This document shows positions 6,881 through 61,339 of a stretch of DNA of 64,000 nt, piece after piece. The position numbers and the translations under genes were made by a program. Every line of letters begins with the position of its first letter. The first letter of the stretch is position 1. The stretch comes from Macrostomum lignano (lineage: Eukaryota): NCBI GenBank assembly GCA_002269645.1, contig NIVC01002045.1, positions 1 through 64,000 on the forward strand, given 5' to 3'. The notes under the pieces were generated by a model. It saw only the letters and a program-made list of their open reading frames with translations, made no database searches and had not been told where the DNA came from.

Positions 6881-9800
6881 ATGAAGCTGAGGGAGCTGTG
6901 GACGCTGCTTTTTGTGCTGCAGTTGCTGCCACAAGCGCTAACGCAGACTGTGCACGAGTCCAACTCCACCGACTTGCTGTTTGCCAAAATCTTCGACATT
7001 CGCTACTCCATGGTCAATCCGCCCAGAGTGAATGGGACATTCAATGTCACATTTGACATGGCCATAGCCCAGCTGCTGGAGCTCGTGAGTTCACCGCATC
7101 TTATTTCATAATTACAAGCAATAACCTACCTTGCAACCAACAACAGGTTAAAGTTACCAATGAAATACGAGTATAATTAGTTGGATTAGTCAGATTAGTC
7201 AGACTACTCAAGTAGAATGACGGGAAAACACGATTCTTGAGAATATTTAGGTGGCAGATTTGACCGAAAAAATACATTACAGCGATAGGAGGTTTTCATT
7301 TTTTTCAGCACAGAAATTGTTATTGCTTTTGATTGGAGGCTCAGTACTCAAGTAGTCCTTGCATCCTTTATATAGACTACTAGCAAAGTTTCAGATAAAT
7401 TTAAACTAATTCTAGCGTTTCTAAACATACACTTTCATTCTTTTATTCTTACCTTATTGAACAAATAATTTCAGAATGAAATCAAGCAAACCATCTCAAT
7501 GCTTACGTGGAGAAGAATGGTAAATAGATGAACTGATTACAGATGCTTGTTCATTTTCTAAAATGCAACTGACAAGTAAATACAATAGAAAGCTCTTGAA
7601 TTTTTCAGACCTGGTACGACACCAGACTGTCCTGGCGAAATCGAGTCTTCAACGGCAACCTGAGCTTCAACTCTGTCCAGTCAATCAAAATTCCAAATAG
7701 TCAGATCTGGAAGCCGGATTTGGTCGTGTACAATGAGTACGCTGGTTGATTGCCCTTTTCATTGCTTACTTAATCATTATTACTCTTAGAACCTGGTTCT
7801 GATATAATCGTCTATCGTCTAGCATTCCATCAGTCATATCGACTGTCGAGTAAGAACTGATTTTTTCGCTACTGAGGGCCCAGGATTTCAAGTTTCAAAC
7901 GATTGTTAAGGTCCAGAGCTTAGCGATAGACGAAATCGGGATTCGTCACTTATCAATTGTATTTCTGGGTTGACTCTAAACCTGAAGTTTTATGTATCTA
8001 TGCATCATACTTGACTCTGTAAGTGGAAAAACGCGTCACCAATCAACCCGACCTCTGCAGCGTTCGAGAAACAGAGCTCGACTGGTCCTTCTACTACGCC
8101 ACAGTTCGGTCCGACGGCTTTGTTCGACTAAACACGCCGCAGCTGATGAAGATGTCCTGCGCCATCAATGTCGAATACTTTCCGTACGATAAGCAGTCGT
8201 GCAGGATGAAGATTGGCAGCTGGACAATGGACGGCATCGAGCTGAACTTGCTGAACATCAGCTCCCATGCGGATCTGTCATCGTTGGAGGAAGACAATGA
8301 GTACTGCGTGATCGGGGCGCCTCTGAAGCGAAACGAGATCAAATACGCGTGCTGTAGTGCACCCTACCCCGACATTACGTACAGAATTTTGCTGCAGGTA
8401 ACTGATTACGCTAATAATAGATGCTGCTTGCCAACTGACAGCTATGGGTTGGGGCTTTTGAATATATATTGGTATTCCGATGGTGTTCCGATGGTGTACC
8501 GATGGTGTAACGATGGTGTGCCTATAGTGTTCCGATGGTGTACCGATGGTGTACCGATGGTGTACCGATGGTGTACCGATGGTGTACCGATGGTGTTCCG
8601 ATGGTATTCCGATGGTATTCCGATGGTGTTCCGATGGTGTACCGATGGTGTACCGATGGTGTGCCCATAGTGTTCCGATGGTGTGCCCATAGTGTTCCGA
8701 TGGTGTACCGATGGTGTACCGATGGTGTGCCCATAGTGTTCCGATGGTGTAACGATGGTGTACCGATGGTGTGCCCATAGTGTTCCGATGGTGTACTGAT
8801 AGTGTTCCGATGGTGTACCGATGGTGTACCGATGGTGTACCGATGGTGTACCGATGGTGTACCGATGAAATACTGATGGTGTACCGATGGTGTACCGCCA
8901 GGACCAAATTTTGCACATGACTGGACAGATTCATTGTGCCTTTGCCCTGGTTGGGAATGACAAAGCAGCACCAGGTTAAATAGCTCGTAGTAACTCATTC
9001 AAAGCATTGATCGTAAGCATACTTACGCAGATCATGCTCAACGTACTCTAAACAAATAGTTTCAGTCTAAACACTTCCATAGCGCATCATTCATGAATTA
9101 AGGTCATACTCATTCTAACTCTACTTTGTCCATCCTTCCCTGCTCTCCTGACAACGGGGTCCGGTTTACATGGTAATCAATTTATTCTACATGACGGAAA
9201 AGTTGGTTTTCCTGGATCGCGTGTGTCAGGCTGCACTCCGAGAACAGTCACTTAACTAGAATTCGCCGCGCAGCTGTGGTTGCATAGGAATGGAATTGAG
9301 CCAGAGAGAAGCACTAGGGGAGCGGATGAATGGCAGACGGACGAACTTCCTGCTCACGGCTCTCCCTTAGCAACACTGATCCATAATTTCCCGAGCACTC
9401 TGTTACCATGGCTGCCTATTGGCACTTGAGTTTGACCCGGAAGGATATAAACGATAGCCGCGAATAAAAGCTGTGCCGGCATTGAGGTTTGCTGCTACGC
9501 CCGCAAGCTGAAACAATTGCAAGCTGGCCGATTTATTTGGCTGCACAGAGGATATGCCTAGCAGTCCGGGAAAGACCAAAGTCGTTTGATTTCTATTCTG
9601 CAGGCTTTCCGTCAACCAAGGGGCAGGCCAATTTACTGGGGGGACTTAATTAACGCTCAAAGCAAGGAGAAACCAAGAATGACAGTGAATAGAAGTGGAA
9701 GCTGGAGGAGAACAAATGTCTTGGTTAAAATATGTTCTTGAAGATGTAGCATACTGAGAAGCCGAAAGAGCTGGAAGATAAAGGCTGTTCTATAAAAGCG

Positions 9801-11984
9801 CCCAAGCAATTGTAGGCTGGTAATACATAATTAATTAATGCCTCTGGGAACATCATTGAGCAAATTAGACGCCCACTGATGGTCCAGAGAGCCAAGCTCT
9901 CTGGCAGTTGCAACGAGACAGACTTTTTCTGTGCGGTCTAGTGCCTACGCAAACATAGGCTCCAGTGAGGTACTTTTCAGTCAAACAGATGAGTAACTGC
10001 AATATTTGATGTGTCAGTGACTGCAATTTAGTTATTGCGCGTATTCTGCCATATTAGCCGTATATGGAATTAGATACATTTCCCTAAGTGCGAGCTGGTA
10101 TGATTAAAACCTTGGAATAATTGAAGTATTCGTCAAGCGCGTCGAAGCACAGAAGTGCATTCGTTGAAACTTGACGATACATTAAAATCTTTCGGGTTTT
10201 TCCCCACAAACCGTTTCAGCGCAAGCCGCTGTACTACGAGATCAACCTCATCATGCCCTGCATCGCCATCCTCATTGTGGCCCTGTTCGGCTTCCGACTG
10301 CCGCCCGAGTCCGGCGAGCGGATCTCCTTGTGCGTCACGGTGCTGCTGGCGCTCAGCGTATTTCTGCAGCTGGCCAGCGAGCACACGCCGACTCAGAGCG
10401 ACGTTGTGCCGCTCATCTGTGAGTTTCTGTCGTGAACGTGGCGAAGGGAATGATGAGGCAAGCTCCGTGTCTCGAACTCCTAAGTTATCCTACCGCTGCC
10501 ACACCAACATACTTGTGCAAGATGCAGATACGGTAGCTCAAGCTGCTCAGCAGTAACCCCCGTTGCCTCTACTGCCTGTGCTAATTAGAGCTGGGATGGT
10601 ACAAGTTCTGTACTTGGGGTTTTATAAAGTACGATCGGCTGAAATGGCTAGCAGACCAGGCAGAAGTCATTTGGCTGCACTTCAAGGCGGGTCACATCGG
10701 ACGCAATTGTAATTTGTAATTTATAGTATACGTGTGGATTCGGGATTAAAACAAACAACTAGTGGAAAGTAGTTGAAGCAAATGAAGATGAAGTCAATTC
10801 GGTGTGAGCAGCAATTCGAAGTCGGCGTCATCCCTCACCGTGACTTAAAAGTATCCATTTGCCCTCGACGTCCGTCCAACGTCGGGTACGTTTCGTACGT
10901 CGGCCCTCTTACGTCGGGTCGGGTAAATCAAAGTCCACATTTGATTCAAGGATAGGCAGATGATCAAAGCTTTGCTATCTAACCAATCAACTATTAGCAG
11001 ACGCGTCGGTGCAGGGAGGTAAAAACCGAAACAAAAACCAAAACCAAAACCAGCAAGCCAAAGGTCTTACTTTGAATAACCAATTATGAAGCATGCTCCC
11101 AATCTCGGGTGGCTTAATTTTTTTACTCGGAAAAGTTAAAAGCAATACTACCATAGGCTGCATTGACTCATTCAATTCTATACTAAAAAATATTTATTTT
11201 TCAGCTCGCTACTTCATGGCCGCCATCGGAATGTCCTCAATGTGCGTGCTGGGCAGCATCTTGGTCCTGCTGCTGCACTTCAACGGCAAGCAGGCCAGAC
11301 CGATGGGCTCCAGAACTGAGCTGTTCTTCACTCTGCTGTGCCGCCTCATCTGCTACCCGGGCTTCGAGGAATCTGGCGCCTGCCGGGGCGGCAACCGCAG
11401 CGATAGAGTTCGCCCCGATGTCAGCAGAAAACTAAATGCAACTGTGAAGCACTGGGTTAGTTGTCAGGGAGTTAATGGGGTTTCCTAAAAAGCCTTCATA
11501 GCCTCCATGCTACCCACCAGCCTTCCCCATGTGAATCCGACAGGCCAACCCGAGCAAAAATAGCAGCGGACGAAGCACCGGCAGTCGCTCGCCTCAAAGT
11601 TCCACCACAGCCATCAACAATGACATGGAGGTCGAGGAAGTTGATATAGCTCAATACAGAGTTCGACCTGCTCCTACAGTCCAGGCCAAGGTGCCACCGA
11701 CGCTGCCTCCACCTCAGCAGCTGCCAGAGTGGGCCGCTGATGCTCTGGATCGGGTTGATGCCACATTATTTGACATTCGCTTAGCTCTGGCTCGGTCGCA
11801 GGACTCAAAACGACGTGAAAGACGCTGGGAGGACGCCGCCCAGGTCACGGACCGGCTGCTATTCTACATAGCCATCACCGGCTTCATCGGACTCAGCGTC
11901 GCGGTCTTCATGGTGCGGCCCAGCGAAGCCATCAGCGCCGCCGCCAACTGCAAGCAGCTGCGCGCCGCTACGATGGGCACCTGA
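6881..11984 (+). CDS. Nicotinic acetylcholine receptor-like alpha subunit, copy A (534 aa predicted, 7 exons, apparently intact)
   Basis: Exons 6881-7084, 7475-7519, 7609-7736, 8061-8397, 10220-10418, 11205-11455, 11544-11984, all GT-AG and phase-compatible. Signal peptide, WKPDLVVYN (loop A), Cys-loop CAINVEYFPYDKQSC, GSWTMDG (loop B), YACCSAPYPD (loop C with vicinal Cys), M1-M2 [29 protein letters not shown]3, and M4 [11 protein letters not shown]. Confidence 0.93.
8470..8896. repeat. Minisatellite of 11-bp units (GATGGTGTACC) with GATGGTGTGCCCATAGTGTTCC variants, intron 4 of copy A
   Basis: Directly visible tandem array. It explains the repetitive ORFs at 8278-8998. Confidence 0.95.
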
Positions 11985-14325: not shown

Positions 14326-14490
14326 TAGATTGGCTGGCCAATCGCTGTTAGCGGGGCCGGGGGCTTGTCGTCGCCCTGTTTGGGGGTGCTTGGTCCGGGG
14401 GTGGGTGCGCCGCCCCCGGGGCGGGGGTGGGTGTCTGTGGGGCCTTTTTAGCCCCGTGCGTTGTGCTCAACTCAACTTACTCTGGGTACT

Positions 14491-21480: not shown

Positions 21481-24400
21481 ATGCGATTGAAGACTGCGCT
21501 GTTCTCCGCATTGCTGAGCACCCTGCTGCTGCAGCTGCTGCCACCAGCGCTGATGCAGAGCGTGCACGAATCCAGCTCCGCCGACTTGCTGTTCTCCAAG
21601 ATTTACGAAGCTCATCTCTCGTTGATCCCTCCGCCTAAAGTGAACGGTACATTTAATGTCACCTTTGACATGGCCATTGCGCAGCTACTGGAGCTCGTGA
21701 GTAACTGACTCTGATTGCTATTCTGCTGTTTCGCTAAACTAATCAACTAATTTTTCATGTAACTTTTTTCTTGTGTCAAGTGTAAAAAAGTAATGTTCCT
21801 TTCCTTCATCAATTCGATACTGGTTTCCAAACAGCATTGTACTTTGAATTCTGGTGTCCAAATACTTTTTACAGAATAATGGATTGCATCTTATGATCTT
21901 TTTATGGAAATATTTACCTCTTGAAACATTTTTGACTATTTGTACCCCAAACAATACCTGATTTTATTAAATAACGCAATGTAAAGACGATAAGAGGTTT
22001 ATCCTGTTGGAATGTTGGAATGCATTGGGGATTCAACGAATACATTATATCGTTAATTACAGACAGCTTATAACTACTACTTTTTCCTTCACTTGCTTCA
22101 GGACGAACTCAAGCAGACAGTCTCCATGCTCACCTGGAGGAGAATGGTGAGTGTGCTCACTACCTTAAACACGTGTAGCCTGATTACGGCAGTACTCAAG
22201 TTGCTTTGATTTTGCAGTCCTGGTACGACACCAGACTGTCATGGCGGAGTCGCGTCTTCGATGGCAACCTGAGCTTCAACTCTATCAGCAGCATCAAGAT
22301 TCCAAACAGCCAGATCTGGAAGCCGGACTTGGTCGTGTACAATGAGTGAGTCGAAATGTTTGTTTGATCTTCCAGTTAGAATTTAGATGTCAATCAAAAC
22401 TAATGAAATCACCAAACCGTCCACCCTCCGCAGTGTGAGAAAAACGGAGCTCGACTGGTCCCTCTACTACGCGTCAATTCAATCAGACGGCCTCGTTCGA
22501 CTCAACACCCCCCAGCTGATGAAGCTGTCCTGCCCAATCAATGTCCAACTGTTTCCTTACGATAAGCAGGTGTGCAGGATGAAGATCGGCAGCTGGACAA
22601 TGGATGGTTTTGAGCTCAACTTGCTCAACGCGAGCACGCACGCTGACCTGTCCTCGATGGCGGAGGACAACGAGTTCTGCCTCGTCAAGGCGCCGCTGGA
22701 GCGAAACGTGATAAAGTACGCGTGCTGCGATGCGCCTTACCCGGACATTACGTACAGCATTTTGCTGCAGGTAAATGCGGCTTGTCAACCGGGCACGTTT
22801 TGGAGCTGTTCGGTGCACTTTCTACGCTAGGGTTGAGCATAGCGATTACAGAGCGTACATGTAGCTCGCATGTGCTGATTGGTTGGCTAAAATTCAAGCA
22901 TGCGTGCGTATGGGAACATTTCGTAGTTTTTGACCCTGCAATTCTGTGAAAAATGTGCGGTATTTCTTTCGTATCGCCCTCAGTGTTGCTTTGTGCTGGC
23001 TTTGCTGGGAGCATAGACTTTTTTAACTGTGAATTAAATGTGGAGTTTATCTGTGTTTTGCAGGAAAGTTTTGGATCGCAAATAGGTGAGGTTGTTTCAT
23101 AAACTAAGTCTGACGACGCGTAAATTTAGTTCTAACTTAAAGTGCAGCTTAGCAATGAGTTGTGAGCGCTTTTCATCAACTTTTAGGATTCACTAGCACT
23201 CCAGCCCGTTCGGGGAGTGCAAAAAGGAAAATGAAAATATTGCTAATATATTAAAGAATAGACCCATGCGATGCTTCCAGTAAGCCTGGGCATCTCAGCG
23301 ATTCCACCAGCTGTAAGCCTTGACAATAACATCTTAGCAATGCTCCCAGTAAGCCTTGACATCTCAACAATCCCACAAGCCTTGACATCTTAGAAATTCC
23401 CCATAAGCCTTGACATCCCAGCAATTCCCCATAGGCCTTGACATCTTAGCAATTCCCCCAGCTGTAAGCCTTGACATCTTAGCAATTCCCCTAGCTATAA
23501 GCCTTGACATCTTAGCAATTCCCTATTAAGCCTTGACAACTCAGCAATTTCCTCTTAAACCTAGCACAATGTCGTTGAGGCATTTCTGTTCAAGTGATTA
23601 TGCACTTTAGTAACACCCGACTTTAATTCAAACAATCAGTTCCGGATTCAAACAATTCAAGTTGAAGACAAAGAAAGATATTCATAAATTTTACAATTAA
23701 ATAAGCTAGGTATAGCTATTTATAACCCAAAGCATCAGCTCAAGAATTGAAGTTTAGTCTATGGCCATAGACGTGTTGAGCTCTCACTGCAAGAAAAATA
23801 CACTAATTAGATAGGGAGAATACAGTTTTTAAAATATTTAATCCCTTTAGCATTGAACAATTTCCTAGCCACGACCCATGTACCGTCATGGAGAAATTTC
23901 TGATCGAATGGTGCAAGTTTGGTGGAAATCGGTTGAGCCGTTTTTTCTATTATCTATCGCACAGACAGACAGACAGACAGACAGAGACAGCTTAGATTTA
24001 GATATATAGATTTTTAGCTTGGATCCTGGCCAAGATTTAGAAAAGTGTGGTTGAGTAACTTATTAAAAATTTTCACCATGGACGCTTCCACATAGGAATT
24101 GTACCATGACCTTTTTGCCCGCTGGGCACTTATTCTTGCCTTTTAATGCCATAGACTACATTTAAGCCCGCTTGCAGGACTTTAATGCTTTAAACTTACT
24201 TTAATGCAAATTTGCGGGCAGTTAATGACATATAAAATACGATTGCTTATTTAATCGTTAAAAAATTGTACTATTCTGAGCCGGAATGTGTTGTCTGTGG
24301 TAATTTTTAACAAAAACTAGGATATGTATCAGATTAAACATGCCTTTTGAGGGAGTTATTTGTATAAATCACGAGGGCCTGAGGCCCGAGGGATTTATGA

Positions 24401-27400
24401 AAATAACTCCTGAAAAAGGCATGTGTAATCTCGTATAAACCATAGACATAAAGACTTTATGGGATATTATTGAATATTACCAAATAAAATCCCGGAGAAC
24501 GCAAATATTGTCACGGAAAGTCTTTATTTCTATGGATTATTATATCATATAATCTCCTCGAAATCAGGAGCAATCGAATTTAATATATGATAAACGCCGT
24601 TTAATTCATCATAGTCTATGGTTAGAATATCCTCGGCTGCAATCAATGGTCCTCGGCTTGCTACGCTCGCCTCGAGACCATTAAACGCAGCCTCGGACAT
24701 TCTAACCACAGAATGTGAATTAAACGGCGTTTATTATTTACTTAACGCCCGATTATTCTGTCCCACTTTGTCAAGGACACAAATGTCTATGGCACAATAA
24801 TAGTAATACCCATACTTTAAGGGCGTTAATGGAAAAGTCAGAGGGCGCCTCTCCCTAAAATAATACGAATAGCTAAATGGATCGAATCCCTTATAATTTT
24901 ATAGAGTTTAATGCGCGCACTATCAACTTTTTACGGCGCCCTCTGACTTTCCATTAACGCCCTTAAAGCATGGGTATTAATGTACTATACAAACCATCAT
25001 GCCATAACGTTTTTCATGAAGGTTAAAACATGCACTGTATTTCATAAGGACTGCATGGAAAGAAAGTCAGAAAAGACCAGCTTGGATATGGAGAAGAGGC
25101 GCCCAAACTTTCCGATAAAGAAGTTGAAGTACTTTTAAATTTGGCACGAGAGAGACCCAGCCAAGCATAGGGATGCTGATACAAACAGTCAGAATGGACG
25201 CTAACTTTGAAGTTAGAACATAGGAAAACAACCTAAAGATATGCTCCACAGACACAGTTTTGTACCAAAAATACACTCAAAAGAGACAAGAGGCAAGAGA
25301 CAAAAGCGCCCACCCTTTTCTCGGGAGAATCTCGTTTCAGTTTAGTGTCAAATTGGAGACTCTGGGCCATAGAAATTTGTTCTGATGTGCGACTCAATGC
25401 TCAAGATCCCACAGGATCCCATCCGTCAGGAAAGTGAGAACAGGAACCGAGAACAGGGAACTGAATGCTGTGAAGTGGCATTAATCATACCAATGGAATT
25501 GTACGGCTCGTACCAATCATACCAAAGCGTTCTCTGTCATTCATTTGTCGAACCATTACGTCAACAGATGAATGGATTCCTCTAAGAACCGCTTCTGCCT
25601 CCAACCTCAAGTTTTCAAGAGACACTCGCTCTAGCATATCCTACCAGGTACTGTTGGAAAGTACGACGCTGAAAAGGCCCTTGAGCTTCGACAGCATGTT
25701 TACCTTTGTCTTTTTTCATAAGTCAGAGAGCAATGCAAATGCTCTCAGTGATGGCCTAACCTGGAATCCATCTGACAAGCTTATCCCTGGAAACCGATTT
25801 CTAGAATTTGATTGTGCATATATAGGCTGTAGTCCTACACAGAAACGGCTGCTGGGAAAGCAAACGAGCTGCTTGTAAGGTTGCAAGGAATTGCGATAAA
25901 AGATATTGGGATTGATTAGCGACGATTACAGCATTTTCTATAGTCACTCCATTGCTCAGGCTATAAGCACGTGAAGCTAGCAGATAGCTAGCAGGAAAAT
26001 GCGGGATTAAACGATTCTGGGACTGACTATTGATTGATGCCAATAAAAATCGTGCACTCTGTGTTGGAGGCCGGCACAAAAGCTGCAGTTGCTGACCGGC
26101 ACAGAAGCAGAAAATGTATCCCTAATAGAAATTAAAGATTTTTAGGCTGATTGTTGCGATAATTTTAGCTCAGGTGTCTACAGACTGGCGCTCATAAATC
26201 ATGTTGAAAATATTCTGCCACTTTGAATCTACTACCAGCGTATTAAATACTTTGCTCTACTCTGCTAATCTCATCACAGGTATTAACTGGGCATCCACTG
26301 CTCCAGAGCAGAGAGCAGAGATTCCAGAATCGAGCCTGGCACGTACTGTAAGGGCATTGTGCTAGAACATTGTAGGCTGCAGCCCCCTTCATCCTGCAAA
26401 CAGCTCAATTTCAACAGCTGACTGATTTGCAAACACTCAACCCCTTCCAGCGCAAGCCGCTGTACTACGAGATCAACCTCATCATGCCCTGCATCGCCAT
26501 CCTCATTGTGGCCCTGTTCGGCTTCCGACTGCCGCCCGAGTCCGGCGAGCGGATCTCCCTGTCCGTCACGGTGCTGCTGGCGCTCAGCGTGTTTCTGCAG
26601 CTGGCCAGCGAGCACACGCCGACTCAGAGCGACGTTGTGCCGCTCATGTGTGAGTCTGCGAGTGCTGCGCTACCCCAGCTTTGTAGCTAATTGTTTAGCC
26701 TGTAAAACTTATTTAATTGTTTGCAGATATTTCTGCACTTGTTAGCACCAGTTCCCTCACACTGAGCAAACACAGGGCTGAAAATGCTCTTGCAGGGCAA
26801 GATAAAACCGCACGCTAAAAGTACACAGACAGGTCATGGCTACAGCCGGTCAGGCGAGAGCAATGCGACTCATACAATAGGACACACTGTTGCAACATGT
26901 ACGCCAACATGGGTTTGTAGCTAACAGGGGTTGCAGCCTCGTAGTAACAGCGTCGGACTCCCGGCTGAAAAGTCAAGGGTTCTATTATCGACCCACTCGG
27001 AACAATTTGAGCGAAAACTCTTAACTCTGCATTGCTTCAGTTCACCTAACTGTAAAATGGATTTCAGCATTAGCTGGGGGTCATTGAGGATGTGTGGTAA
27101 CCCCCCAGTCCTTGGACTGAATAGTTGTACGCAGCCTTCAGATGCGCCGCGTAATAGCTGCGGCTGAGCTGTTTGGTTGCACATCATACAGCGGCCCTGA
27201 CTTTCAGACATGTGCATTGTGAACTCTCTTAGCCTTGAATGTTGGCCCTCATTTGGGGTGTGAATTGAACAACACCCCCGGCCAATTTCCGTGAGGTGAG
27301 CAAGCTCTAAACTATTGGAACCAGTGTCGTGGGCTTGAGAGCCAGCGTTTTTGAGCGTACCACGGAGCTGTTAAGCTTATACTTATACTCTAGTCTCTGA

Positions 27401-29938
27401 AACTGAATACAGTGGGCTTAGTAGGCATACACTAGAGATACTACACGTACTACACATACACTTTTCAGCCCGCTACTTCATGGTCGCCATCGGCATGTCC
27501 TCGTTGTGCGTTCTGGGCAGCATCCTGGTGCTGCTGCTGCAATCCAACGGCAAGCAGGCCAAGCGAATGGGCCACCAAACTGAGCTGTTCTTCACTCTGC
27601 TGTGCCGCCTCATCTGCTATCCGGGCTTCCAGGAAGCTGGAGCGAACGCCAGCGGCTGCAGAGGTGACGGAGGCACCCACGGAGGCAACAGGCACCAGAA
27701 TCGCGTCAACAGGCGCTCGGTAGGCTATCGATTTTCCTAAAAATCATTTTAGTGCAGGAAGCTCGGTTCCATGGAACAATTAAACTTCCAGCGTTTTTAA
27801 GATGAGTGTACGGAGTTGTAGTGTCAGTGGAGGTTTCGAAGCCCCAGCTCACTGTTACTATTCGTATTATAAAGAGAGCGGTCTCTGGGTGTTGGGACGC
27901 TCCGAGTAGATAAATTGCCTTCTTTGGCATTTGGAACGCGTAGTTTCGGCCTGATGCAGCGTGGGGTGCTGGGAGTTCACAAAGCACTCCTATGCAAGTA
28001 CAGGTAGCAGTAATGACAGCAGTACCGAATGATACCTCTGGTCCCGTAACTATATATGCTACCGAACAGCCAATAAGGATGCAATAGCCTTTACTGATAC
28101 GACTAGGGTAACAGTTCGAGCAATTGCAAATGTATAAATATAGGGGCAGCACTTACCAGTCGAGTCAGTTCTACACCATTTTACCTTCAATTTCATTCTC
28201 AAAACTCCAATTCACTTTAGACAATCAAAAGTTGAACTTCGACACTTCTAGCTCTGTACATGTAAATCTACGAGTACATTCGTTTTAGACAAACTCCTTT
28301 TCAATATCGACAGAAAGCGCAAATTTGTATGAGGAAGAAAGCCTATACAATAGGCTTTATGTTGTTGTAAATGTTATTGGCGTATGTTGTTGGCACTGAC
28401 AAAACTCCATTTCCTTTCCGTCAAAATGCAAATAATATCCACAATCTATTGACGCAACTTCTATTAACTCTGGTTCACTTTCGTCAAAGTACGTCAAAGT
28501 AGTGAATCAGAGTTTATAGAAGTCTTCTGATTGTCTAAGGTGAATCGAAGTTCGAATAAAATTGAAGGAAAACTTGTGTAATTGCAATAGCCTTCTGTTT
28601 GTACTGACCGCTGGGATTTAGTCCGTTTATTTCCCGTCTCTTCGCAGTGAAAAGGATTTTCGAAATAACCGCCTTTACGCAAATCGGCCAATAAATATAC
28701 TCAAACGCCTGCCCGAACAAAAGGGGGAGAGAGAAACAGGGCAAGGGGCACAGCCAATCACGCGGAGGGCAGAGCCACGCAGGGCTGAAATACATCTGAG
28801 AGATAAGAAAAAAGGCTCACTGCCAACCAATCAGCTTCCAGCACAGGCGCGCACGATAGGGTGGGGCCTAATGGACATGGCGTCAACCCCCTAACCAAGT
28901 CCGCACTGTTTTGGAGGGGTCTACGACGTTTCCCAGCCGGACGTTTGCCAGCCGACGTTTGCCAGCCGACGTTTGCCAGCCGACGTTTGCCAGCCGACGT
29001 TTGCCAGCGGGACGGTTGCCAGCCGACGTTTGCCTTTACTTTAGACTTTAGTTGTGAGACGCTTCGTTGTCTTCTTATTGACCTTGATGTCAGTGACGCT
29101 TTGGTGCTGCTAGTTTGGACAGTTTTAGTTACATCGGCTGCTTTGGTATCTGTTACTAAAACCTACTTAAAATATCAAGAAGACGAAGAGTGTTCTAGTG
29201 AGCAGTAGTTTGTTAGTATCCTGTATAACCTGTCCGCAGTTTTTTTAAATGCAAGTACATGTAAGCCTAGAGAGGGCATAATTCTTTAACAAGTGTCCGG
29301 CTGGTAAAAGTCCCGCTGGCATACGTCGCCGGCAAACGTCGCTATCCCGTTTTGGAGTGGCTGGCCCAAAGAGCCAAACTAAAACTGAGCAGTGCCCATG
29401 CACTATAGAGTCTTGCGAAGAATTAAAATCAACATAACAATGAGCCATTTACTAGAAAAATGTCACGCATAATTCTTTTATTTTGCAGATTAGCCCGAGC
29501 AAAAGCAGCAACGGCAGAAGCAACAGCAGAGGCAAAAACACCATTTCGCCGACAGCCTCGTCTACCATCGTGTCCAGCAGCATGGATATGGAGGAGATTG
29601 ACATTGATGAACTGCGCGTCCGAGCTGAGCGCAGTTCGACTGCTGATGTGCCGCCGCCACCGTCTCCTCAGCTGCCGCCGCCGCAGTGGGCGGCTGATGC
29701 TCTGAACCGAGTCAGCTCAACCCTGACGGAGATTCATCTGGCCATGGCCCAGTCGAAGGACTCCAAGCGATGGGAGCGACGTTGGGAGGACGCCGCCCAG
29801 GTCACGGACAGGCTGATGTTCTACATCTCCATGGTGGGCTTCATCGGACTCATCCTGACCGTCTTGATAGTCCGACCCAGCGAAGCCATTAGCGCCGCCA
29901 CCGACTGCAAGCAGTTTCGCACCGCCTCGATGATCTGA
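21481..29938 (+). CDS. Nicotinic acetylcholine receptor-like alpha subunit, copy B (541 aa predicted, apparently intact)
   Basis: Exons 21481-21696, 22102-22146, 22218-22345, 22434-22770, 26451-26649, 27469-27719, 29489-29938. Internal exon sizes 45/128/337/199/251 are identical to copy A. Loop C is YACCDAPYPD. Confidence 0.94.
23281..23555. repeat. Minisatellite, about 9 units of about 28-33 bp (TAAGCCTTGACATCTTAGCAATTCCC)
   Basis: Directly visible in intron 4 of copy B. Absent from copies C and D. Confidence 0.9.
23870..24010 (-). mobile_element. Helitron/Helentron-associated non-autonomous element end (DINE-like)
   Basis: The minus strand reads ATCTATATAT...(CTGT)n...AAACGGCTCAACCGATTTCCACCAAACTT, the same layout as 30123 onward. 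Confidence 0.45.
24332..24733. repeat. Three consecutive fold-back (palindromic) modules
   Basis: Inverted arms at 24332-24430, at 24440-24458/24517-24535, and at 24591-24733 (TAAACGCCGTTTAATTCA / TGAATTAAACGGCGTTTA). Confidence 0.85.
24806..24977. mobile_element. MITE with about 44-bp TIRs and TA target duplication (Tc1/mariner-like)
   Basis: ATACCCATACTTTAAGGGCGTTAATGGAAAAGTCAGAGGGCGCC / GGCGCCCTCTGACTTTCCATTAACGCCCTTAAAGCATGGGTAT, flanked by TA at 24804 and 24978. Confidence 0.8.
26928..27205 (+). mobile_element. tRNA-derived SINE with CORE/Meta-like domain, intron 5 of copy B
   Basis: Degenerate A and B boxes, then TTAACTCTGCATTGCTTCAGTTCACCTAACTGTAAAATGG and the shared 3' tail. It occupies the same site as the copy C insertion. 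Confidence 0.7.
28917..29348. mobile_element. Mutator-like MITE
   Basis: The 9-bp TSD GTTTTGGAG lies at 28908-28916 and 29349-29357. GGG...CCC termini. The left TIR contains tandem GACGTTTGCCAGCC units, mirrored once on the right. Confidence 0.8.
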
Positions 29939-40263: not shown

Positions 40264-43200
40264 ATGCGGTTGAAGACTGCGCTGTTCTCTGCATTGCTGA
40301 GCACCCTGCTGCTGCAGCTGCTGCCACCAGCGTTGATGCAGAGCGTGCACGAATCCAGCTGCGCTGACTTGCTGTTCTCCAAGATTTACGACGCTCATCT
40401 CTCGATGATTCCTCCGCCTAAAGTGAACGGTACATTTAATGTCACCTTTGACATGGCCATCGCGCAGCTACTGGAGCTCGTGAGTTCACTGACTCTGATT
40501 GCTATTCTGCCGCTTCGCTATACGACCGACTTCTTTGCTTTTGTCAAGTGTAAAAAAGCAATGCTCATTTCTTTCCTCGAGTTGGCACTGCGGGCAGTTT
40601 TCCAAACAGAACTTTTAGAATGCATAAATGAAGCTTATAATCAACATTGACTGCGAAGACCAAAGCGTTTCCACCCACTAGGGCCGTCGTCAGGGTATAT
40701 TTTATCGATGAAACACAAAAAAACTAAATATATAACCTATATTGTATAATCAAATGCGTCAAATCAAAAAGGGGGAGGAACGAGCGTTCTAAAGAGAATG
40801 AAAGTGAAAGTGAACGAGAAATATAGAGATAAGAGAAAGCACGAAGGGGGTAAGTATAAAATTTACGCACGAAAAACTGGTCCACCTCAGAAAACCCTAA
40901 AAAGGTGACCCGCACTGCTATGCAACAGCTGAGGCTACAGTTAGTTTATTCAAGTCGAGCCAAATCAGTCCAAATCAGGATTTCCTTTGCAGCTTCGACG
41001 TGAAGTCGATTTTTACCGTTGTCCGTTTGTAGCTGTCTATTGATCTCGCCACTGATCATGTGTACAATCTTAATCCCCTTAGACGCTGTCCAAGAAGTCG
41101 TTAGGCTTTGCTACCTCCGGCATCTTCCTGTTTGATGACAAATATTATCGCCAGATAGATTACTGAGCCATGGGAAGCCGACTTGCTCCTACTCTTACCA
41201 ATGTTTGCATGGCGCACTAGGAAACAGAGTGGATGTTCCTCTTGACTTCCTACTCTGTCCCTTCTAACCTGTTGAAAAATAAACTAGAGAGATCTTTTCG
41301 GAACTGGTGCAACACTACGATTAGGACTGTTTTTCACAACTGTCAAGGTTTGTCAATTTGTCGGCAAACCAAGACCCGTGTTCCTCGTTCTCTGGCGGCA
41401 GGTGTCGTGTACAAATTTTGTTGTTCTGATGATCAGAATGTCTCGTATGTGGGAAAAACCAAAAGACACCTGCACACTAGAGTTAGGGAGCATTGGTTGA
41501 AGAAGTCTGCTATTCAGGACCAGCTAATGGAATGCAAGAGCCGCCTTGACAGAGAACCAATCAAGCCTTTTTAAAAATATTGACCGTTCCAATTCGGAGT
41601 ACAAACTTTGGCATTCTGAAATCGTTGCACAATACCCCAGCCTCAACGTTCAGCCGTTGCATAGTGGTGCGGGCCACCTTAGTGTACTTAGTTCTTTTGT
41701 GCGTACATTATATATTTGCATCCTTCGTGCTCTTACTCTCTATTTCTCGCTCATTTTCACCCTCACCTGTTTTCAGTGTTGGGCAAAGTTCCGGCACTTC
41801 CGGCACTTTTAGTACCGGAAGTTACTTTTTTTAAAGCGGCACTTTTTCCTGTTCTTTTTTTAGAATGCCGGACTTGGGTAACGGAAGTTACTTTTTGATA
41901 AGTCCGGTACCTCCGGTACTTTGAAATGGGATTAAGGAAAGAGTACAAAAAATAAAGGGAATAATCAATGGTTTTATATTTTCTTAAAAGTTAAAACTAG
42001 AAATGAATTTGAAAAAAAATCATACTGAAAAACCTTAATTGGTATTTAAATTTTTTTGCTATAATGCTTGTACGAGCGTAACTTGAACTGAAAAAACGAA
42101 GTGAAAGCGAAAAACGAAAACTACACTAATTCAACATTTAGAAAAGAGAAGACAAATAAACTGATTACTAATTCAGCAATTCCAATGGAATCAACTCATA
42201 TTGATCTTGTGTCTGAATCTGCCCAGTCTGGCAACAATGAGGCTGAGAATGAGATAGCAAACTCTTCTGGGCCTATGCCAAAAAGCAAGGCTCACCCATG
42301 GCCACATTTGGCAAAATATTTTTCTCCGAAGATGTGGATCAACGAGACAAGCCTAGCTCTTGTTTGCCAACTATGCTTGCCAGCGCAGCAAACAATTAGA
42401 GGCCATGTTTCTACTCTGCAAAACCTTAAAAAACGCATTCAGGCTAAGCACCCATCTGAAGTCAAGAAGGTAAGACGTCACGCAAGATTTTTAAAACGCT
42501 ATTTTGTTTACTAACCTTTTTACTTGTCTCAATTTCACCATTTATTTTTTTAGTTTGAGGACTGCAGAATATACTGTATATTCTGTGTTGAGGACTGCTG
42601 CCGGGCAGGTTCCTGTAGAGGCAGAGCCAAGAAGCGTTTAGAGTGCTCACCTACATGTAGTCCACTAGCGCCTCAGCAGCCAGACAGATGGCCAAAACTG
42701 CTGGTACACCTTCAGCCTCTGTATCTACTGAGAGTGTCACTATAACAACCAAGCAGAAGCAGCCACAACTGCGTCAATGCTCAATCTCAGAGGCCATGGC
42801 TTCTTCATCCAACTACAAATCTGGCCAGTCTGTTTCACAGGAGGATGTGAACACTGCTTTAGTAAACTGCTTTGTAGAAAATATGCTGCCGCTGCATTTG
42901 GTGGAGTCACCATCATTCATCCACCTAGTGAAGACTCTTAATCCATTCAAGGATATTCCATCGCGACGTACATTGGGCAGAAGAATCTGTTCAGCTTTCA
43001 CTGAAATGGAGCAGCGGCTTCAAAGGTTGTTTTTAATGCTCTTTCGTTCATCCCCCTTTTTGATTTGACACCTTGGACTATACAATCGTTATACATTGAG
43101 CTTTTTTGTGTTTCATCGATAAAATATACCGTGACGACGACCCCAGTGGGTTGAAACGCGTTGGTCTTCGCAGTCAATGCTGATTTTAACCTTAATTTGT

Positions 43201-46200
43201 TTATTATTGATTAAGCCAGCAACTGTACCATGTTTTAGAATGCAGGACCGGATGCGCCTGTCTGCGATCTTGAAGCGTCCAAGTACTTTTTAAAGAATAA
43301 ATGATTGCATCTTTCCTACAAAATATTAACCTCTTGAAACATGATTAGCTATTTGTACCCTGACTATTACCTACTTTTATTTAAATTGCGCAATGTAAAG
43401 AATATCAAAGGTTTTTCCTGTTGGAAAGCATTGAAGATTCAACTAATACATGCTATCATTAATTACGGACAGCTCATAGCTACAGGTTTAATCCTTCAAT
43501 TTCTTCAGGACGAACTCAAGCAGACAGTCTCCATGCTCACCTGGAGGAGAATGGTGAGTGTGCTTAGTTCTTTAAAAAAATATTTCCTGATTACGCCTCT
43601 ACTCAAGTTGCATTGATGCTGCAGTCCTGGTACGACACCAGACTATCATGGCGGGGTCGCGTCTTCGATGGCAACCTGAGCTTCAACTCTATCAGCAGCA
43701 TTAAAATTCCAAACAGCCAGATCTGGAAGCCGGACTTGGTCGTGTACAATGAGTGAGCCGAAATGCTTGTTTGATCTTCCATTTAGAATTGCCAAGTAAG
43801 TTGCGAAAGCCGCGTCGCCTACTGATTGCGGCCAAGCCTGCTCTGAAAGCTGATAGCGTCAATCAAAACTAATGAAATCACCAAACCGTCCACCCTTCGC
43901 AGTGTGAGGAAAACGGAGCTCGACTGGTCCCTCTACTACGCGTCAATTCAATCTGACGGCCTCGTTCGACTCAACACCCCCCAGCTGATGAAGCTATCCT
44001 GCCCAATCAATGTCCAACTGTTTCCTTATGATAAGCAGGTGTGCAGGATGAAGATCGGCAGCTGGACAATGGATGGTTTTGAGCTCAACTTGCTCAACGC
44101 GAGCACGCACGCTGACCTGTCCTCGATGGCGGAGGACAACGAGTTCTGCCTCGTCAAGGCGCCGCTTGAACGACACTTGATAAAGTACGCGTGCTGCGCT
44201 GCTCCGTACCCGGACATTACGTACAGCATTTTGCTGCAGGTAAATGCGGCTTGTCAACCGGGCACTTTTTGGAGCTGTTCGGTGCACTTTCGATGCCAGG
44301 GCTTGAGCGTATCAGAGCTTACATGTAGCTCGCGTGTGCGATTTGTTGGCTAAAATGAGGGCATGAGAGCCTGTGGGAACTTTTCGTGGTTTCGTATTAT
44401 AAATTTTGACCATTGACGCTCCCAAAAGGAATTGAAAACATCATGCCATAATGTGTTTATTATGGTTCATTCATACGCTGACTCTATGGAAAGCAAACAA
44501 GAAAAAAAGACCAGCTTGGATATGGAGAAAAGGCGCCCAAACTTTCCAATAAAGAAGTTGAAGTACTTTTAAATTTAGTACGGGACAGACCCATTTTGAG
44601 AGCCAAGCATAGGGATGCTGATACAAACATTCAGAAAAAAAACAGTGAAATAGACGCTAATTCTGAAGCTAGACCTTCGGAAAACAACCCAAGTGACCTA
44701 AATAAATGATTTACGGACACAGTTTTGTACCATGAATACACTGAGCAAGACAAAAGCGTCCACCTTTTTCTTGGGAGAATTTTGTCTCAGTTTAGTGGCA
44801 AATCGGAGACTCTCCGGGCCATAGACATTTGTTCTGATGTGCGACTCAGTTACGTATTGCTCAATCCACAGTTAAGATAGACAGTTCTGGGAAAACTAAT
44901 GACAACAGGAAATGAGAATAGGGAACTAAATGCTGTGAAGTGGCATCGATCATACCAATAGCAGCAAGCGTTCTCCGTCAGTCATTTGTCGAACCATTAC
45001 GCCAACAGATAAATAGACTGTTTTAAAATCGCTTCTGCCTCAAAAATAAACTTTATTGTCCATGGTTGTTCTCAGCAAGCGTCCCACGTTTAACCCAACC
45101 ATAGACAAATTTTGTCTATGGTTGCCATCGAATATATAAACTAATTTTGTCTATGGTTGCCATCGAATATATAAACTAATTTTGCCTATGGTTGCCATCG
45201 AATATATAAACTAATTTTGCCTATGGTTGCCATCGAATATATAAACTAATTTGTCTATGGTTGCCATCGAATATATAAACTAATTTTGTCTATGATTGCC
45301 ATCGAATATATAAACTAATTTGTCTATGGTTGCCATCGAATATATAAACTAATTTTGTCTATGATTGCCATCGAATATATAAACTAATTTTGTCTATGGT
45401 TGCCATCGAATATATAAACTAATTTGTCTATGGTTGCCATCGAATATATAAACTAATTTGTCTATGGTTGCCATCGAATATATAAACTAATTTTGCCTAT
45501 GGTTGCCATCGAATATATAAACTAATTTGTCTATGGTTGAACTGCCTGTTGGATCGATTTACCACTCAACTAAAAGGCGAAATCTCCCGAGAAAAGTGTG
45601 GACAATTTTGTCTGTTGCATAGGATTTGTGTCCCAAACAGCTTCCCATAGGTGGGAACTATGCTTAATCCTAGCTAAGAATAACCCCCAGCTTTATGCAA
45701 AGCATCAATCTAAGTTTCAATCTAAGTTGGATCTCCAACTTTGCTTTATGAAACAGCCCCCTTCAGCATCTCAAGCTGTCAGAGTAAGGCTAGAAAAAAG
45801 CCTAATCGTAGCTAACAAAGTTTTCAAGAAACACTCTCTTTAAAATCTCCAACTGTTAGAGAATATGATGCTGAAAAGGCCCTTGAGCATCGACAGCATG
45901 TTTACCTTTGTCTTTTTTCATAAGTCAGAGAGCAATGCAAATGCTCTCAGTGATGGCCTAACCTGGAATCCATCTGACAAGCTTATCCCTGGAAACCGAT
46001 TTCTAGAATTTGATTGTGCATATATAGGCTGTAGCCCTACACAGAAACGGCTGCTGGGAAAGCAAACGAGCTGCTTGTAAGGTTGCAAGGAATTGCGATA
46101 AAAGATATTGGGATTGATTAGCGACGATTACAGCATTTTCTATAGTCACTCCATTGCTCAGGCTATAACCACGTGAAGGGAACCTGCTCATAAATGCTTT

Positions 46201-59802: not shown

Positions 59803-59812
59803 CTGATTGGCT
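59803..59812 (+). promoter_or_regulatory. Inverted CCAAT box upstream of copy D
   Basis: CTGATTGGCT, 178 bp before the ATG. Confidence 0.5.
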
Positions 59813-59980
59813 GATTGTCTCGCATTGCTGCTGTTTGAAACGCTGCTAAAACTCAAATAGCTGCATCCTGCCAGAAGCGGATAACACAGGAGGAGCCACA
59901 GCCTCCCTAAGCCAAAAGAGAAAAAAATCTTTTGAGACGAGAGGGTTAATTTTTCAACTTTTTTTCAACTACAAGCGGGC

Positions 59981-61339
59981 ATGCGGTTGAATACTGCGCT
60001 GTTCTCCGCATTGCTGAGCACCCTGCTGCTGCAGCTGCTGCCACCAGCGTTGATGCAGAGCGTGCACGAATCCAGCTCCGCCGACTTGCTGTTCTCCAAG
60101 ATTTACGACGCTCATCTCTCGATGATTCCTCCGCCTAAAGTGAACGGTACATTTAATGTCACCTTTGACATGGCCATTGCGCAGCTACTGGAGCTCGTGA
60201 GTTCACTGACTCTGATTGCTATTCTGCCGCTTCGCTATACGACCGCTACTTTATACGTTGATTCGCTCAATTAGCGAAAAAATGATACTAATACTAAACA
60301 AAAAATAACTAATAATAAATATTAGTCGACGAATTGTTTCTTTGTAAATTTTTCCTCTGTTTCAAGCCGAAAGAAGTAAATGTTCTTCTCTTTGATGGGA
60401 TCGATACTGCAGGCACGTGATATTTTCAAATCGAGTGCAAGATCGGGTGCGCCTCCACTGCGGGTTGAAAGCGTCCCAGCAGTTTTACAGAATAAGAAAG
60501 GATTGGCAGGCGAGAGTAATGCAAATAAGATCAGAGGTTTATCCTGTTGTTTAACCGGTAATGCTCTAGAGTTTAATGAACTCATGCTATCATTAGTTAC
60601 AGACAACTTTATTACAGAGTTAATTAGTTACAGACAGCATTGCTGCAACGTTATCCTTCACTTGCTTCAGGACGAACTCAAGCAGACAGTCTCCATGCTC
60701 ACCTGGAGGAGAATGGTGAGTGTATTGACTGCCTTAAACACCTGTTGCCTGATTACGGCAGTACTCAAGTTGCTTTGATTTTGCAGTCCTGGTACGACAC
60801 CAGACTATCATGGCGGGGTCGCGTCTTCGATGGCAACCTGAGCTTCAACTCTATCGGCAGCATCAAGATTCCAAACAGCCAGATCTGGAAGCCGGACTTG
60901 GTCGTGTACAATGAGTGAGTCGAAATGTTTGTTTGATCTTCCATTTAGAATTTAGATGTCAATCAAAAATAATGAAATCACCAAACCGTCCACCCTCCGC
61001 AGTGTGAGGAAAACGGAGCTCGACTGGTCCCTCTACTACGCGTCAATTCAATCAGACGGCCTCGTTCGACTCAACACCCCCCAGCTGATGAAGCTGTCCT
61101 GCCCAATCAATGTCCAACTGTTTCCTTATGATAAGCAGGTGTGCAGGATGAAGATCGGCAGCTGGACAATGGATGGTTTTGAGCTCAACTTGCTCAACGC
61201 GAGCACGCACGCTGACCTGTCCTCGATGGCGGAGGACAACGAGTTCTGCCTCGTCAAGGCGCCGCTGGAGCGAAACGTGATAAAGTACGCGTGCTGCGAT
61301 GCGCCTTACCCGGACATTACGTACAGCATTTTGCTGCAG
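59981..61339 (+). CDS. Nicotinic acetylcholine receptor-like alpha subunit, copy D, exons 1-4 only (the rest is presumably beyond the window)
   Basis: Exons 59981-60196, 60671-60715, 60787-60914, 61003-61339. Exon 4 differs from copy B by two silent changes that I could find. Confidence 0.9.

What the first reader, a model, noticed from the sequence alone, without database searches (positions are those of the whole stretch)
10220..10418. Pore exon homogenised between otherwise diverged paralogues
Seen: exon 5 (M1-M2-M2/M3 loop) differs at only 4 of 199 nt between A and B, and the first 108 nt are identical, including all synonymous sites. By contrast, A and B differ at 16 of 78 nt in the first 26 full codons of exon 4 and 7 of 60 nt at the start of exon 6, and the introns flanking exon 5 are unalignable. 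B and C differ at 3 of 199 nt. Inference: exon-limited gene conversion keeps the channel module uniform while the ligand-binding domain diversifies, so subunits could co-assemble with different ligand specificity. RNA-level constraint (editing, splicing element) or cDNA-mediated conversion are alternatives.
Basis: partly seen in the sequence, partly recalled or inferred. Interest (0 to 1): 0.72.

Follow-up and report, generated by a model that had tools for sequence, protein, structure and literature searches.

The report
Pore exon copied between receptor paralogues
In a tandem cluster of nicotinic-receptor-like genes from an unidentified invertebrate, the 199-base exon for the channel pore is almost identical between two otherwise old and diverged copies, most likely because it was recently copied from one gene to the other by gene conversion, a well-known process seen here in a new gene family.

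Summary
The window holds a same-strand tandem array of seven-exon, alpha-type nicotinic-receptor-like genes: A, B, C and the first four exons of D.

A and B differ at 4 of 199 nt in exon 5 (M1-M2), and the first 108 nt are identical. Synonymous divergence (dS) is 0.04 in exon 5 against 0.47-0.91 in the other measurable exons, and 0.73 for all the other exons pooled. The flanking introns share no detectable similarity.

- **Not codon bias:** P is about 3e-11 even when exon 5's own codon usage sets the expectation.
- **Not a transmembrane-segment effect:** M3 has the same GC3 and similar amino-acid conservation, but normal synonymous divergence.
- **Constant constraint fits poorly:** the young pair B-C has 3 differences in exon 5, where 0.5 would be expected if constraint explained A-B.
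- **Exchange is active in the array:** D is a three-part mosaic of C-like, B-like and older sequence.

Best explanation, at about 0.78: interlocus gene conversion confined to the only block that still has enough homology.

The ligand-binding exons show ordinary purifying selection.

No sister-species sequence could be obtained, so the classic test (paralogues more alike than orthologues) was not possible. This is a new member of a known kind.

The parts
10220..10418 (+). Exon 5 of gene A (M1, M2 and the M2-M3 linker; 66 codons plus 1 nt). This is the homogenised block.
   Evidence: Gene model. Differs from B at 4 of 199 nt and from C at 7 of 199. dS to B is 0.039.
10217..10327 (+). Longest uninterrupted identity between A and B in genomic DNA: the acceptor CAG plus the first 108 nt of exon 5. 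It matches B 26448-26558.
   Evidence: Alignment and counts. In the spliced CDS the run is 120 nt, because the last 12 nt of exon 4 are also identical.
26451..26649 (+). Exon 5 of gene B
54911..55109 (+). Exon 5 of gene C. It has three private changes relative to A and B: Ile>Thr in M1, one synonymous change, and Ala>Ser.
6881..11984 (+). Gene A, an alpha-type nicotinic-receptor-like subunit of 534 aa. Exons: 6881-7084, 7475-7519, 7609-7736, 8061-8397, 10220-10418, 11205-11455, 11544-11984.
   Evidence: All splice sites are GT/AG and the reading frame is open. Pfam Neur_chan_LBD 3.6e-43 and Neur_chan_memb 5.1e-26. Best solved relatives are nAChR alpha-4 and alpha-7, E about 1e-63.
21481..29938 (+). 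Gene B, 541 aa. Exons: 21481-21696, 22102-22146, 22218-22345, 22434-22770, 26451-26649, 27469-27719, 29489-29938.
40264..57721 (+). Gene C, 541 aa. Exons: 40264-40479, 43509-43553, 43625-43752, 43903-44239, 54911-55109, 56865-57115, 57272-57721. Intron 4 is enlarged by a LINE insertion.
59981..61339 (+). Gene D, exons 1-4 only: 59981-60196, 60671-60715, 60787-60914, 61003-61339. Its exon 5 lies beyond the end of the window.
59811..62467 (+). The mosaic in D that shows DNA-level exchange in the array. 59811-60240 is C-like (98.6%, against 90% to B). 60716-61498 is B-like (97.1%, against 92% to C). Similarity to B collapses at about 61490-61625. In 61650-62467 D is only 73-74% identical to B and C, which are 95.4% identical to each other.

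Best explanation
Exon 5 of gene A and exon 5 of the B/C lineage were homogenised by non-allelic (interlocus) gene conversion between tandem, same-strand paralogues. This probably happened during repair of a break inside the exon. The event, or the last of several, is about as recent as the B/C/D amplification.

The tract stops at the exon edges because the flanking introns of A and B no longer share any homology. Heteroduplex DNA can form only within the 199-bp exon. Purifying selection on M1-M2 had kept that exon the most similar block in the gene, and earlier conversions may have helped.

- **Shown:** the synonymous-site identity, the exon-bounded extent, the rate discordance, and active recombination elsewhere in the array.
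- **Inferred:** the repair mechanism, the direction of transfer, and the number of events.
For: 1. dS between A and B is 0.039 in exon 5, 0.47-0.91 in the other measurable exons, and 0.73 pooled.
2. Synonymous codon differences at sites with the same amino acid are 2 of 63 in exon 5 and 104 of 300 elsewhere. Even within runs of at least 8 conserved residues outside exon 5, about a third of degenerate codons differ.
3. Codon bias cannot explain it. Using exon 5's own codon usage, 40.7 of 63 identical codons are expected and 61 are observed (P = 3.5e-11).
4. There is a matched control. M3 and M4 have the same GC3 (0.88-0.92) as M1 and M2, and M3 is 88% conserved in amino acids. Yet the start of exon 6, which encodes M3, differs at 7 of 60 nt.
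5. The rates are discordant. Outside exon 5, A-B divergence is 8.5 times that of B-C (346/1401 against 42/1425). Inside exon 5 the two are equal (4 against 3). If constraint explained A-B, B-C should show 0.48 differences, but it shows 3, two of them amino-acid changes (Poisson P = 0.013, Fisher P = 0.035).
6. Similarity ends within 3 nt upstream of the exon and after GTGAGT downstream, and the introns share no similarity.
7. Recombination is demonstrably active in this array. D is C-like in its 5' region and B-like in exons 2-4. Its distal intron 4 is about 26% diverged from both, while B and C are 95% identical there.
8. Conversion confined to exons or to one functional domain between tandem paralogues of channels and receptors has precedents: Nav genes in newts (PMC8476164) and TLR1/TLR6 (PMC2077338).
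Against: - No orthologues or further paralogues could be obtained. The closest database protein from another organism is 40-48% identical, so the decisive test of paralogues against orthologues was not possible.
- With three sequences, the exon 5 tree has the same topology as the gene tree.
- The synonymous-only version of the B-C test is not significant: 1 difference observed against about 0.2 expected under constraint.
- There is no exon-5-specific GC3 excess that would indicate biased gene conversion.
- At the amino-acid level, the M1-M2 conservation is within the range of other nAChR pairs.
- A 199-bp block is near the lower limit usually quoted for efficient ectopic conversion in animals. 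This last point is from my own knowledge and was not tested.
Confidence: 0.78

Rival explanations
1. Extreme purifying selection on the nucleotide sequence of exon 5 itself, from an RNA-level function such as an editing duplex, splicing enhancers or mRNA structure. Synonymous sites have simply not changed since A and B duplicated.
For: - M1-M2 is the most conserved protein segment, with 2 of 66 residues differing.
- The boundaries coincide with the exon, as selection on the mature RNA would predict.
- B-C exon 5 has only 1 synonymous difference, too few to exclude some synonymous constraint.
- In gene A, a 14-nt stretch at 10246-10259 inside exon 5 is 93% complementary to the downstream intron at 10445-10458.
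Against: - Exon 5 RNA folds no better than shuffled sequence (z = -0.42).
- The 14-nt intron complement in A has no counterpart in B.
- Rfam gave no hit.
- B and C have accumulated 3 differences in exon 5, two of them amino-acid changes. That is about half the per-site rate of their other exons and about 6 times what the constraint needed to explain A-B would allow (P = 0.013).
- M3 is equally GC3-rich and equally conserved in protein, yet has normal synonymous divergence.
Confidence: 0.1
2. RNA- or cDNA-templated conversion. A reverse-transcribed copy of a B-type mRNA repaired gene A, which would explain why the tract is exon-precise. The LINE elements in the window encode reverse transcriptase.
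For: - Identity stops at the exon edges in genomic DNA. In the spliced CDS it continues 12 nt into exon 4, giving a 120-nt run.
- Four LINE-type insertions, three with a Pfam reverse-transcriptase domain, lie in and between the genes.
Against: - Introns 4 and 5 are retained in A.
- The 12 nt are four conserved codons (ILLQ), expected to match by chance about one time in five.
- The tract does not cross the exon 5/6 junction: there are mismatches at exon 5 nt 198 and exon 6 nt 2.
- Exon-bounded tracts are equally expected from DNA-level conversion when homology ends at the exon edge.
Confidence: 0.05
3. Assembly or polishing artefact. Reads from the several B-type copies were mis-mapped onto A's exon 5 during consensus polishing and overwrote its true sequence.
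For: Tandem paralogue arrays are prone to such errors. The identical stretch (108-199 nt) is about the length of a short read. No read data are available here.
Against: - A keeps four private differences in the second half of the exon.
- Mis-mapping would need A's true exon to be already very similar.
- The flanks are unique right up to the splice sites.
- A UniParc entry is 100% identical to A over the 82 exon-4 residues it covers, and it differs in the intron-4 repeat. This shows that gene A, though not its exon 5, was recovered independently.
Confidence: 0.04

Closest known systems
Domain-limited interlocus gene conversion between tandem receptor paralogues, e.g. mammalian TLR1/TLR6 (PMC2077338)
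   Same: Tandem paralogues. One functional module (there the transmembrane and TIR region, here the M1-M2 pore module) stays near-identical at the DNA level while the ligand-recognition part diverges. The authors offer the same adaptive reading: limited divergence of a module that must work with shared partners.
   Different: In TLR1/TLR6 the tract is about 900 bp inside a single coding exon, and conversion was shown to be independent in nine species. Here the tract is one 199-bp exon flanked by unalignable introns, and no second species is available.
Non-allelic gene conversion among tandem voltage-gated sodium channel paralogues and duplicated exons in newts (PMC8476164)
   Same: Ion-channel genes in tandem. 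GENECONV-type tracts of about 90-630 bp lie within exons that encode pore (P-loop) segments.
   Different: A different channel superfamily. In the newts the conversion spread adaptive toxin-resistance substitutions. No adaptive substitution is evident here.
Lineage-specific tandem arrays of nAChR genes in lophotrochozoans (PMC6896357)
   Same: Tandem arrays of divergent nicotinic-receptor subunit genes. The best database matches to gene A are brachiopod, mollusc and annelid nAChR-like proteins.
   Different: That paper describes expansion by retroposition and tandem duplication, mostly of intron-poor genes. A term search of its text found no use of 'gene conversion' or 'concerted'. The genes here have seven exons. 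The source organism of the window is unknown.
RNA-editing-associated synonymous constraint in neuronal channel exons (own knowledge: GluA2 Q/R site, insect nAChR and RDL editing, cephalopod recoding)
   Same: It would also give exon-bounded suppression of synonymous change in a channel gene.
   Different: It requires a conserved double-stranded RNA partner. None was found, and the exon does not fold unusually well.

Membership tests
Cys-loop pentameric ligand-gated ion channel, nicotinic acetylcholine receptor type | Neurotransmitter-gated channel ligand-binding domain followed by the four-helix transmembrane domain | tested here: met
   Pfam PF02931 3.6e-43 (residues 36-241) and PF02932 5.1e-26 (residues 248-509). 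Best solved relatives are nAChR alpha-4 and alpha-7, E about 1e-63.
Cys-loop pentameric ligand-gated ion channel, nicotinic acetylcholine receptor type | Cys-loop: two cysteines separated by 13 residues in the extracellular domain | tested here: met
   CAINVEYFPYDKQSC in A and [15 protein letters not shown] in B, C and D, read from the translations
Cys-loop pentameric ligand-gated ion channel, nicotinic acetylcholine receptor type | Alpha-type subunit: vicinal cysteines in loop C (YxCC) | tested here: met
   KYACC(S/D/A)APYPD in A, B/D and C
Cys-loop pentameric ligand-gated ion channel, nicotinic acetylcholine receptor type | Cation-selective pore signature (Glu at -1' before M2), and gating by acetylcholine | not testable with these tools
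   The sequence has SGERISL with Glu at -1'. Ion selectivity and the agonist need electrophysiology.
Interlocus (non-allelic) gene conversion tract | A bounded segment in which paralogues are far more similar than in the flanking sequence, including at synonymous sites | tested here: met
   dS 0.039 against 0.73. 2 of 63 against 104 of 300 synonymous codon differences. Permutation P = 2e-5 to 5e-6.
Interlocus (non-allelic) gene conversion tract | Similarity not explained by codon bias or local composition | tested here: met
   P = 3.5e-11 under exon 5's own codon usage. M3 and M4 have the same GC3 but normal divergence.
Interlocus (non-allelic) gene conversion tract | Discordant divergence time or phylogeny between the tract and the rest of the gene | tested here: inconclusive
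   Branch lengths are discordant: A-B is about equal to B-C in exon 5 but 8.5 times larger elsewhere (Poisson P = 0.013, Fisher P = 0.035). Topology cannot differ with three sequences, and D's exon 5 is outside the window.
Interlocus (non-allelic) gene conversion tract | Within the tract, paralogues of one species are more alike than orthologues between species | not testable with these tools
   No relative closer than 40-48% identity in the protein collections. A degenerate exon-5 DNA pattern found nothing in the metagenome contigs.
Interlocus (non-allelic) gene conversion tract | Donor and acceptor physically close and in the same orientation, in a region with independent evidence of exchange | tested here: met
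   A, B, C and D are all on the + strand within 55 kb. D is a three-part mosaic.
Interlocus (non-allelic) gene conversion tract | GC-biased signature in the converted block | tested here: not met
   Exon 5 GC3 is 0.91, but the M3 and M4 segments outside the tract have 0.88-0.92. This feature is supportive when present, not obligatory.
RNA-structure or editing-constrained exon | Unusually stable or conserved RNA duplex involving the exon, such as an intronic complementary sequence conserved between paralogues | tested here: not met
   Fold z = -0.42. The only exon-intron complement is 14 nt in A and is absent in B. No Rfam family matched.
cDNA-mediated (retro) conversion | Tract that continues across splice junctions, and/or loss of the intervening introns | tested here: not met
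   Introns 4 and 5 are present. Identity crosses the 4/5 junction by only 12 nt and does not cross the 5/6 junction.

The most novel reading that the evidence does not exclude
The homogenisation is recurrent and maintained by selection. Conversions that keep the M1-M2 pore module interchangeable among array members are favoured because the subunits co-assemble into heteropentamers, while the ligand-binding exons are kept out of the exchange. The array would then work as a combinatorial set of ligand-binding heads on one common pore. A second unexcluded novelty is that the exon-precise tract reflects RNA-templated repair.
Probability: 0.1. Interest if true: 0.65.

Novelty: new member of a known kind. 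Interest (0 to 1): 0.38.

Why it matters
- **Phylogeny:** it is a clean, compact example of one exon of a receptor gene having a different history from the rest of the gene. Anyone building trees or dating duplications of nicotinic-receptor expansions from transmembrane-domain alignments would be misled by such tracts.
- **Literature:** in the papers searched, gene conversion is not discussed for these expansions. The searches listed no paper on gene conversion in nicotinic or other ligand-gated channel gene families.
- **If it proves recurrent across the array:** it would suggest that pore properties of co-expressed subunits are kept uniform while binding sites vary. That can be tested by expression in oocytes.
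- **As it stands:** this is an instance of a familiar process, not a new mechanism.

Tried and rejected
- **Cross-species test.** The full-length A protein search found nothing above 40% identity. A degenerate 47-nt exon-5 pattern found nothing in the metagenome contigs.
- A permitted search with the exon 4 reading frame taken directly from the window gave only P0022, and otherwise hits of 51% identity or less, 48% at most over the full exon.
- **P0022.** It is a UniParc entry that reads from A's exon 4 into intron 4. It has no contig on record.
- **Lingula.** The locus of the best hit holds a single receptor gene, so it is no use as a tandem-array control.
- **LINE ORF look-up** to identify the genome: not on record.
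- **GC-biased conversion signature.** Rejected, because all four transmembrane segments share the high GC3.
- **Amino-acid-level control.** The M1-M2 to ligand-domain divergence ratio is 0.14 for A-B. In 25 other nAChR pairs of similar divergence the median is 0.41 and the range 0-1.16, so protein conservation alone proves nothing.
- **A second tract in exon 6.** A 42-nt identical run ([14 protein letters not shown]) was considered. My rough estimate, made without a tool, is that a run of that length arises by chance about one time in four at the background rate.
- **RNA structure, intronic complement and Rfam:** all negative.
- **Extra or orphan copies of exon 5 in the window:** none. There are only three.

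Full report
**What is in the window.** The sequence is eukaryotic. A 40-nt probe from the flagged exon occurs three times on the + strand. Self-comparison and tblastn show a tandem array of related genes.

I built gene models by hand from conserved blocks and GT/AG sites.
- Gene A: 6881-11984, 534 aa.
- Gene B: 21481-29938, 541 aa.
- Gene C: 40264-57721, 541 aa.
- Gene D: first four exons only, 59981-61339.

The proteins have both Pfam domains of neurotransmitter-gated channels. Their best solved relatives are nicotinic receptor alpha-4 and alpha-7 (E about 1e-63). They carry the 13-residue Cys-loop, the vicinal cysteines of alpha-type subunits and a Glu at -1' of M2.

The best database hits are 40% identical "alpha-10-like" proteins of a brachiopod, molluscs and an annelid. 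The organism is probably a poorly sampled invertebrate, but it is not identified.

B, C and D are young duplicates whose introns align at 92-95%. A is much older, and its introns do not align with theirs.

**The observation.**
- A-B exon 5: 4 of 199 nt differ, and the first 108 are identical.
- First 26 codons of exon 4: 16 of 78 differ.
- Start of exon 6: 7 of 60 differ.
- B-C exon 5: 3 of 199 differ.

Per-exon Nei-Gojobori estimates for A-B are dS 0.73, 0.54, 0.74, 0.039, 0.47 and 0.91 for exons 1, 3, 4, 5, 6 and 7. All exons but 5, pooled, give 0.73. The 15-codon exon 2 is saturated.

Among codons that encode the same amino acid, 2 of 63 differ in exon 5 and 104 of 300 differ elsewhere (Fisher P = 3e-8). 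Shuffling the synonymous-difference indicator along the gene gives P = 2e-5 for the longest run without change and P = 5e-6 for the emptiest 63-codon window.

Similarity ends at the splice sites. Upstream, 10 of 13 nt of the pyrimidine tract match, about what the acceptor tracts of the other exons show. Downstream, only GTGAGT matches. Sensitive blastn finds nothing shared between A's introns 4 and 5 and those of B or C.

**Is it constraint or copying?** I ran four internal tests.
- **Codon bias.** Even if codons are drawn from exon 5's own very GC-rich usage, only 40.7 of 63 would match. 61 match (P = 3.5e-11).
- **Matched control.** High GC3 is a property of all four transmembrane segments (M1 0.92, M2 0.91, M3 0.92, M4 0.88). 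M3 is 88% conserved in protein, yet the start of exon 6, which encodes it, differs at 7 of 60 nt. Conserved peptide runs in other exons differ at about a third of their degenerate codons.
- **Relative rate.** Outside exon 5, A-B has 346 differences in 1401 nt and B-C has 42 in 1425, a ratio of 8.5. Inside exon 5 they have 4 and 3. If constant constraint explained A-B, B-C should show 0.48 differences. It shows 3, two of them amino-acid changes (Poisson P = 0.013, Fisher P = 0.035). Judged by exon 5 alone, A and B parted at about the time B and C did.
- **RNA-level function.** Exon 5 folds no better than shuffled sequence (z = -0.42). The only exon-intron complement is 14 nt in A, with no counterpart in B. 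Rfam finds nothing in the window.

**A caveat I checked.** At the protein level this conservation is not unusual. In 25 other nicotinic-receptor pairs with comparable divergence in the ligand-binding exon, the M1-M2 to ligand-domain divergence ratio has a median of 0.41 and ranges from 0 to 1.16. A-B is 0.14. The case therefore rests on synonymous sites and on the rate discordance, not on amino-acid identity.

**Independent evidence that the array exchanges sequence.** D is a mosaic.
- Its promoter, exon 1 and the start of intron 1 are 98.6% identical to C and 90% to B.
- From exon 2 through exon 4 and about 150-280 nt into intron 4 it is 97.1% identical to B and 92% to C.
- Similarity to B then collapses at about 61490-61625. 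In distal intron 4, D is only 73-74% identical to B and C, which are 95.4% identical to each other there.

So D looks like an older paralogue whose 5' half has been overwritten, in at least two pieces, by B- and C-type sequence, with tract ends inside introns. Ectopic exchange at the DNA level is thus a fact in this locus.

**Mechanism proposed.** A break in one copy's exon 5 was repaired from the paralogous exon 5. Between A and the B lineage only that exon retains usable homology, so heteroduplex and mismatch correction can reach the exon edges but go no further. This gives an apparently exon-precise tract without needing an RNA intermediate.

Purifying selection on M1-M2 would keep this exon above the homology threshold for longest, and each conversion resets it. 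That explains why exon 5 was homogenised and not the others, without invoking selection for uniformity.

The direction of transfer and the number of events cannot be resolved:
- All four A-specific sites lie in the second half of the exon.
- A equals B at all three B-C differences.
- This fits either a B-to-A event after the B/C split or three changes private to C.

cDNA-mediated conversion is not supported. The introns are retained, identity crosses the 4/5 junction by only 12 nt, and it does not cross the 5/6 junction. An assembly or polishing artefact cannot be excluded without reads, but it is unlikely given A's four private differences and its unique flanks.

**Comparison with what is known.** Domain- or exon-limited interlocus conversion between tandem paralogues is well documented.
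- In TLR1/TLR6 the transmembrane and TIR module is homogenised while the ligand-binding part diverges (PMC2077338).
- In newt sodium-channel paralogues, converted tracts cover pore-loop exons (PMC8476164).
- Tandem arrays of nicotinic-receptor genes are well known in lophotrochozoans (PMC6896357). A term search of that paper found no use of "gene conversion" or "concerted".
- My literature searches listed no paper on gene conversion in nicotinic or other ligand-gated channel gene families.

I therefore rate this as a new member of a known kind.

**What could not be done.** The decisive test is whether paralogues are more alike than orthologues in exon 5. It needs a sister species or more paralogues, and none was reachable.

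**Verdict.** Exon-limited gene conversion is the best explanation, at about 0.78. The adaptive "shared pore, diversified binding site" reading is possible but untested. Interest is moderate to low.

Noticed in passing
window 59811-62467 (gene D): D is a three-part mosaic. Its 5' region is C-like (98.6%). Exons 2-4 and the start of intron 4 are B-like (97.1%). Its distal intron 4 is only 73-74% identical to B and C, which are 95% alike there. D looks like an older paralogue whose 5' half was overwritten.
   Followed up: yes
window 14035-14388: A decayed receptor-gene relic. About 95 nt of exon 4, 81% identical to A, is followed within about 60 nt by frameshifted pieces of exon 7. Exons 5 and 6 are absent. 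It lies directly upstream of a LINE ORF.
   Followed up: partly
window 14461-16508 (+), 34303-36984 (+), 46447-51641 (-), 55393-56250 (-): Non-LTR retrotransposon (LINE) insertions: ORFs with Pfam hits to SAP, endonuclease, reverse transcriptase or RNase H domains (no one element has all four). The element at 46.4-51.6 kb sits in intron 4 of gene C and accounts for about half of that intron's 10.7 kb. A fragment lies in C's intron 5.
   Followed up: partly
window 8152-8670 (A exon 4 into intron 4): The UniParc entry UPI0007A292C2 (P0022, 174 aa) is identical to the last 82 residues of A's exon 4, then reads on into intron 4. It differs from the window only inside the 11-nt tandem repeat. It appears to be a mis-called ORF from another assembly or haplotype of the same species.
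   Followed up: partly
window 8477-8897; 45101-45539; 62851-64000: Long intronic tandem repeats. An 11-nt unit x38 lies in A's intron 4, and a 35-nt unit x13 in C's intron 4. An 18-nt unit x64 (CAGAGACATCAGAGACAC) in D's intron 4 runs to the end of the window and hides D's exon 5.
   Followed up: no
window 8340-8397, 22713-22770, 44182-44239 and 61282-61339 (loop C, at the end of exon 4): The residue just after the vicinal cysteines of loop C differs between copies: Ser in A, Asp in B and D, Ala in C. C also has RHL where B and D have RNV just upstream. These sites lie in or just upstream of loop C, which forms part of the agonist-binding site in nicotinic receptors (own knowledge).
   Followed up: no
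window 11313-11354 (exon 6 of A) against B exon 6: A 42-nt run is identical between A and B, encoding [14 protein letters not shown] after M3. It is the third-longest identical run in the CDS. It may be a second small conversion patch, but it is not significant on its own.
   Followed up: partly
window 3584-3766 and 1703-1977: Short segments upstream of gene A resemble pieces of B's and C's intron 5 (81-82%) and the LINE fragment in C's intron 5 (68%). No receptor exon lies nearby, so they are probably dispersed repeats.
   Followed up: no
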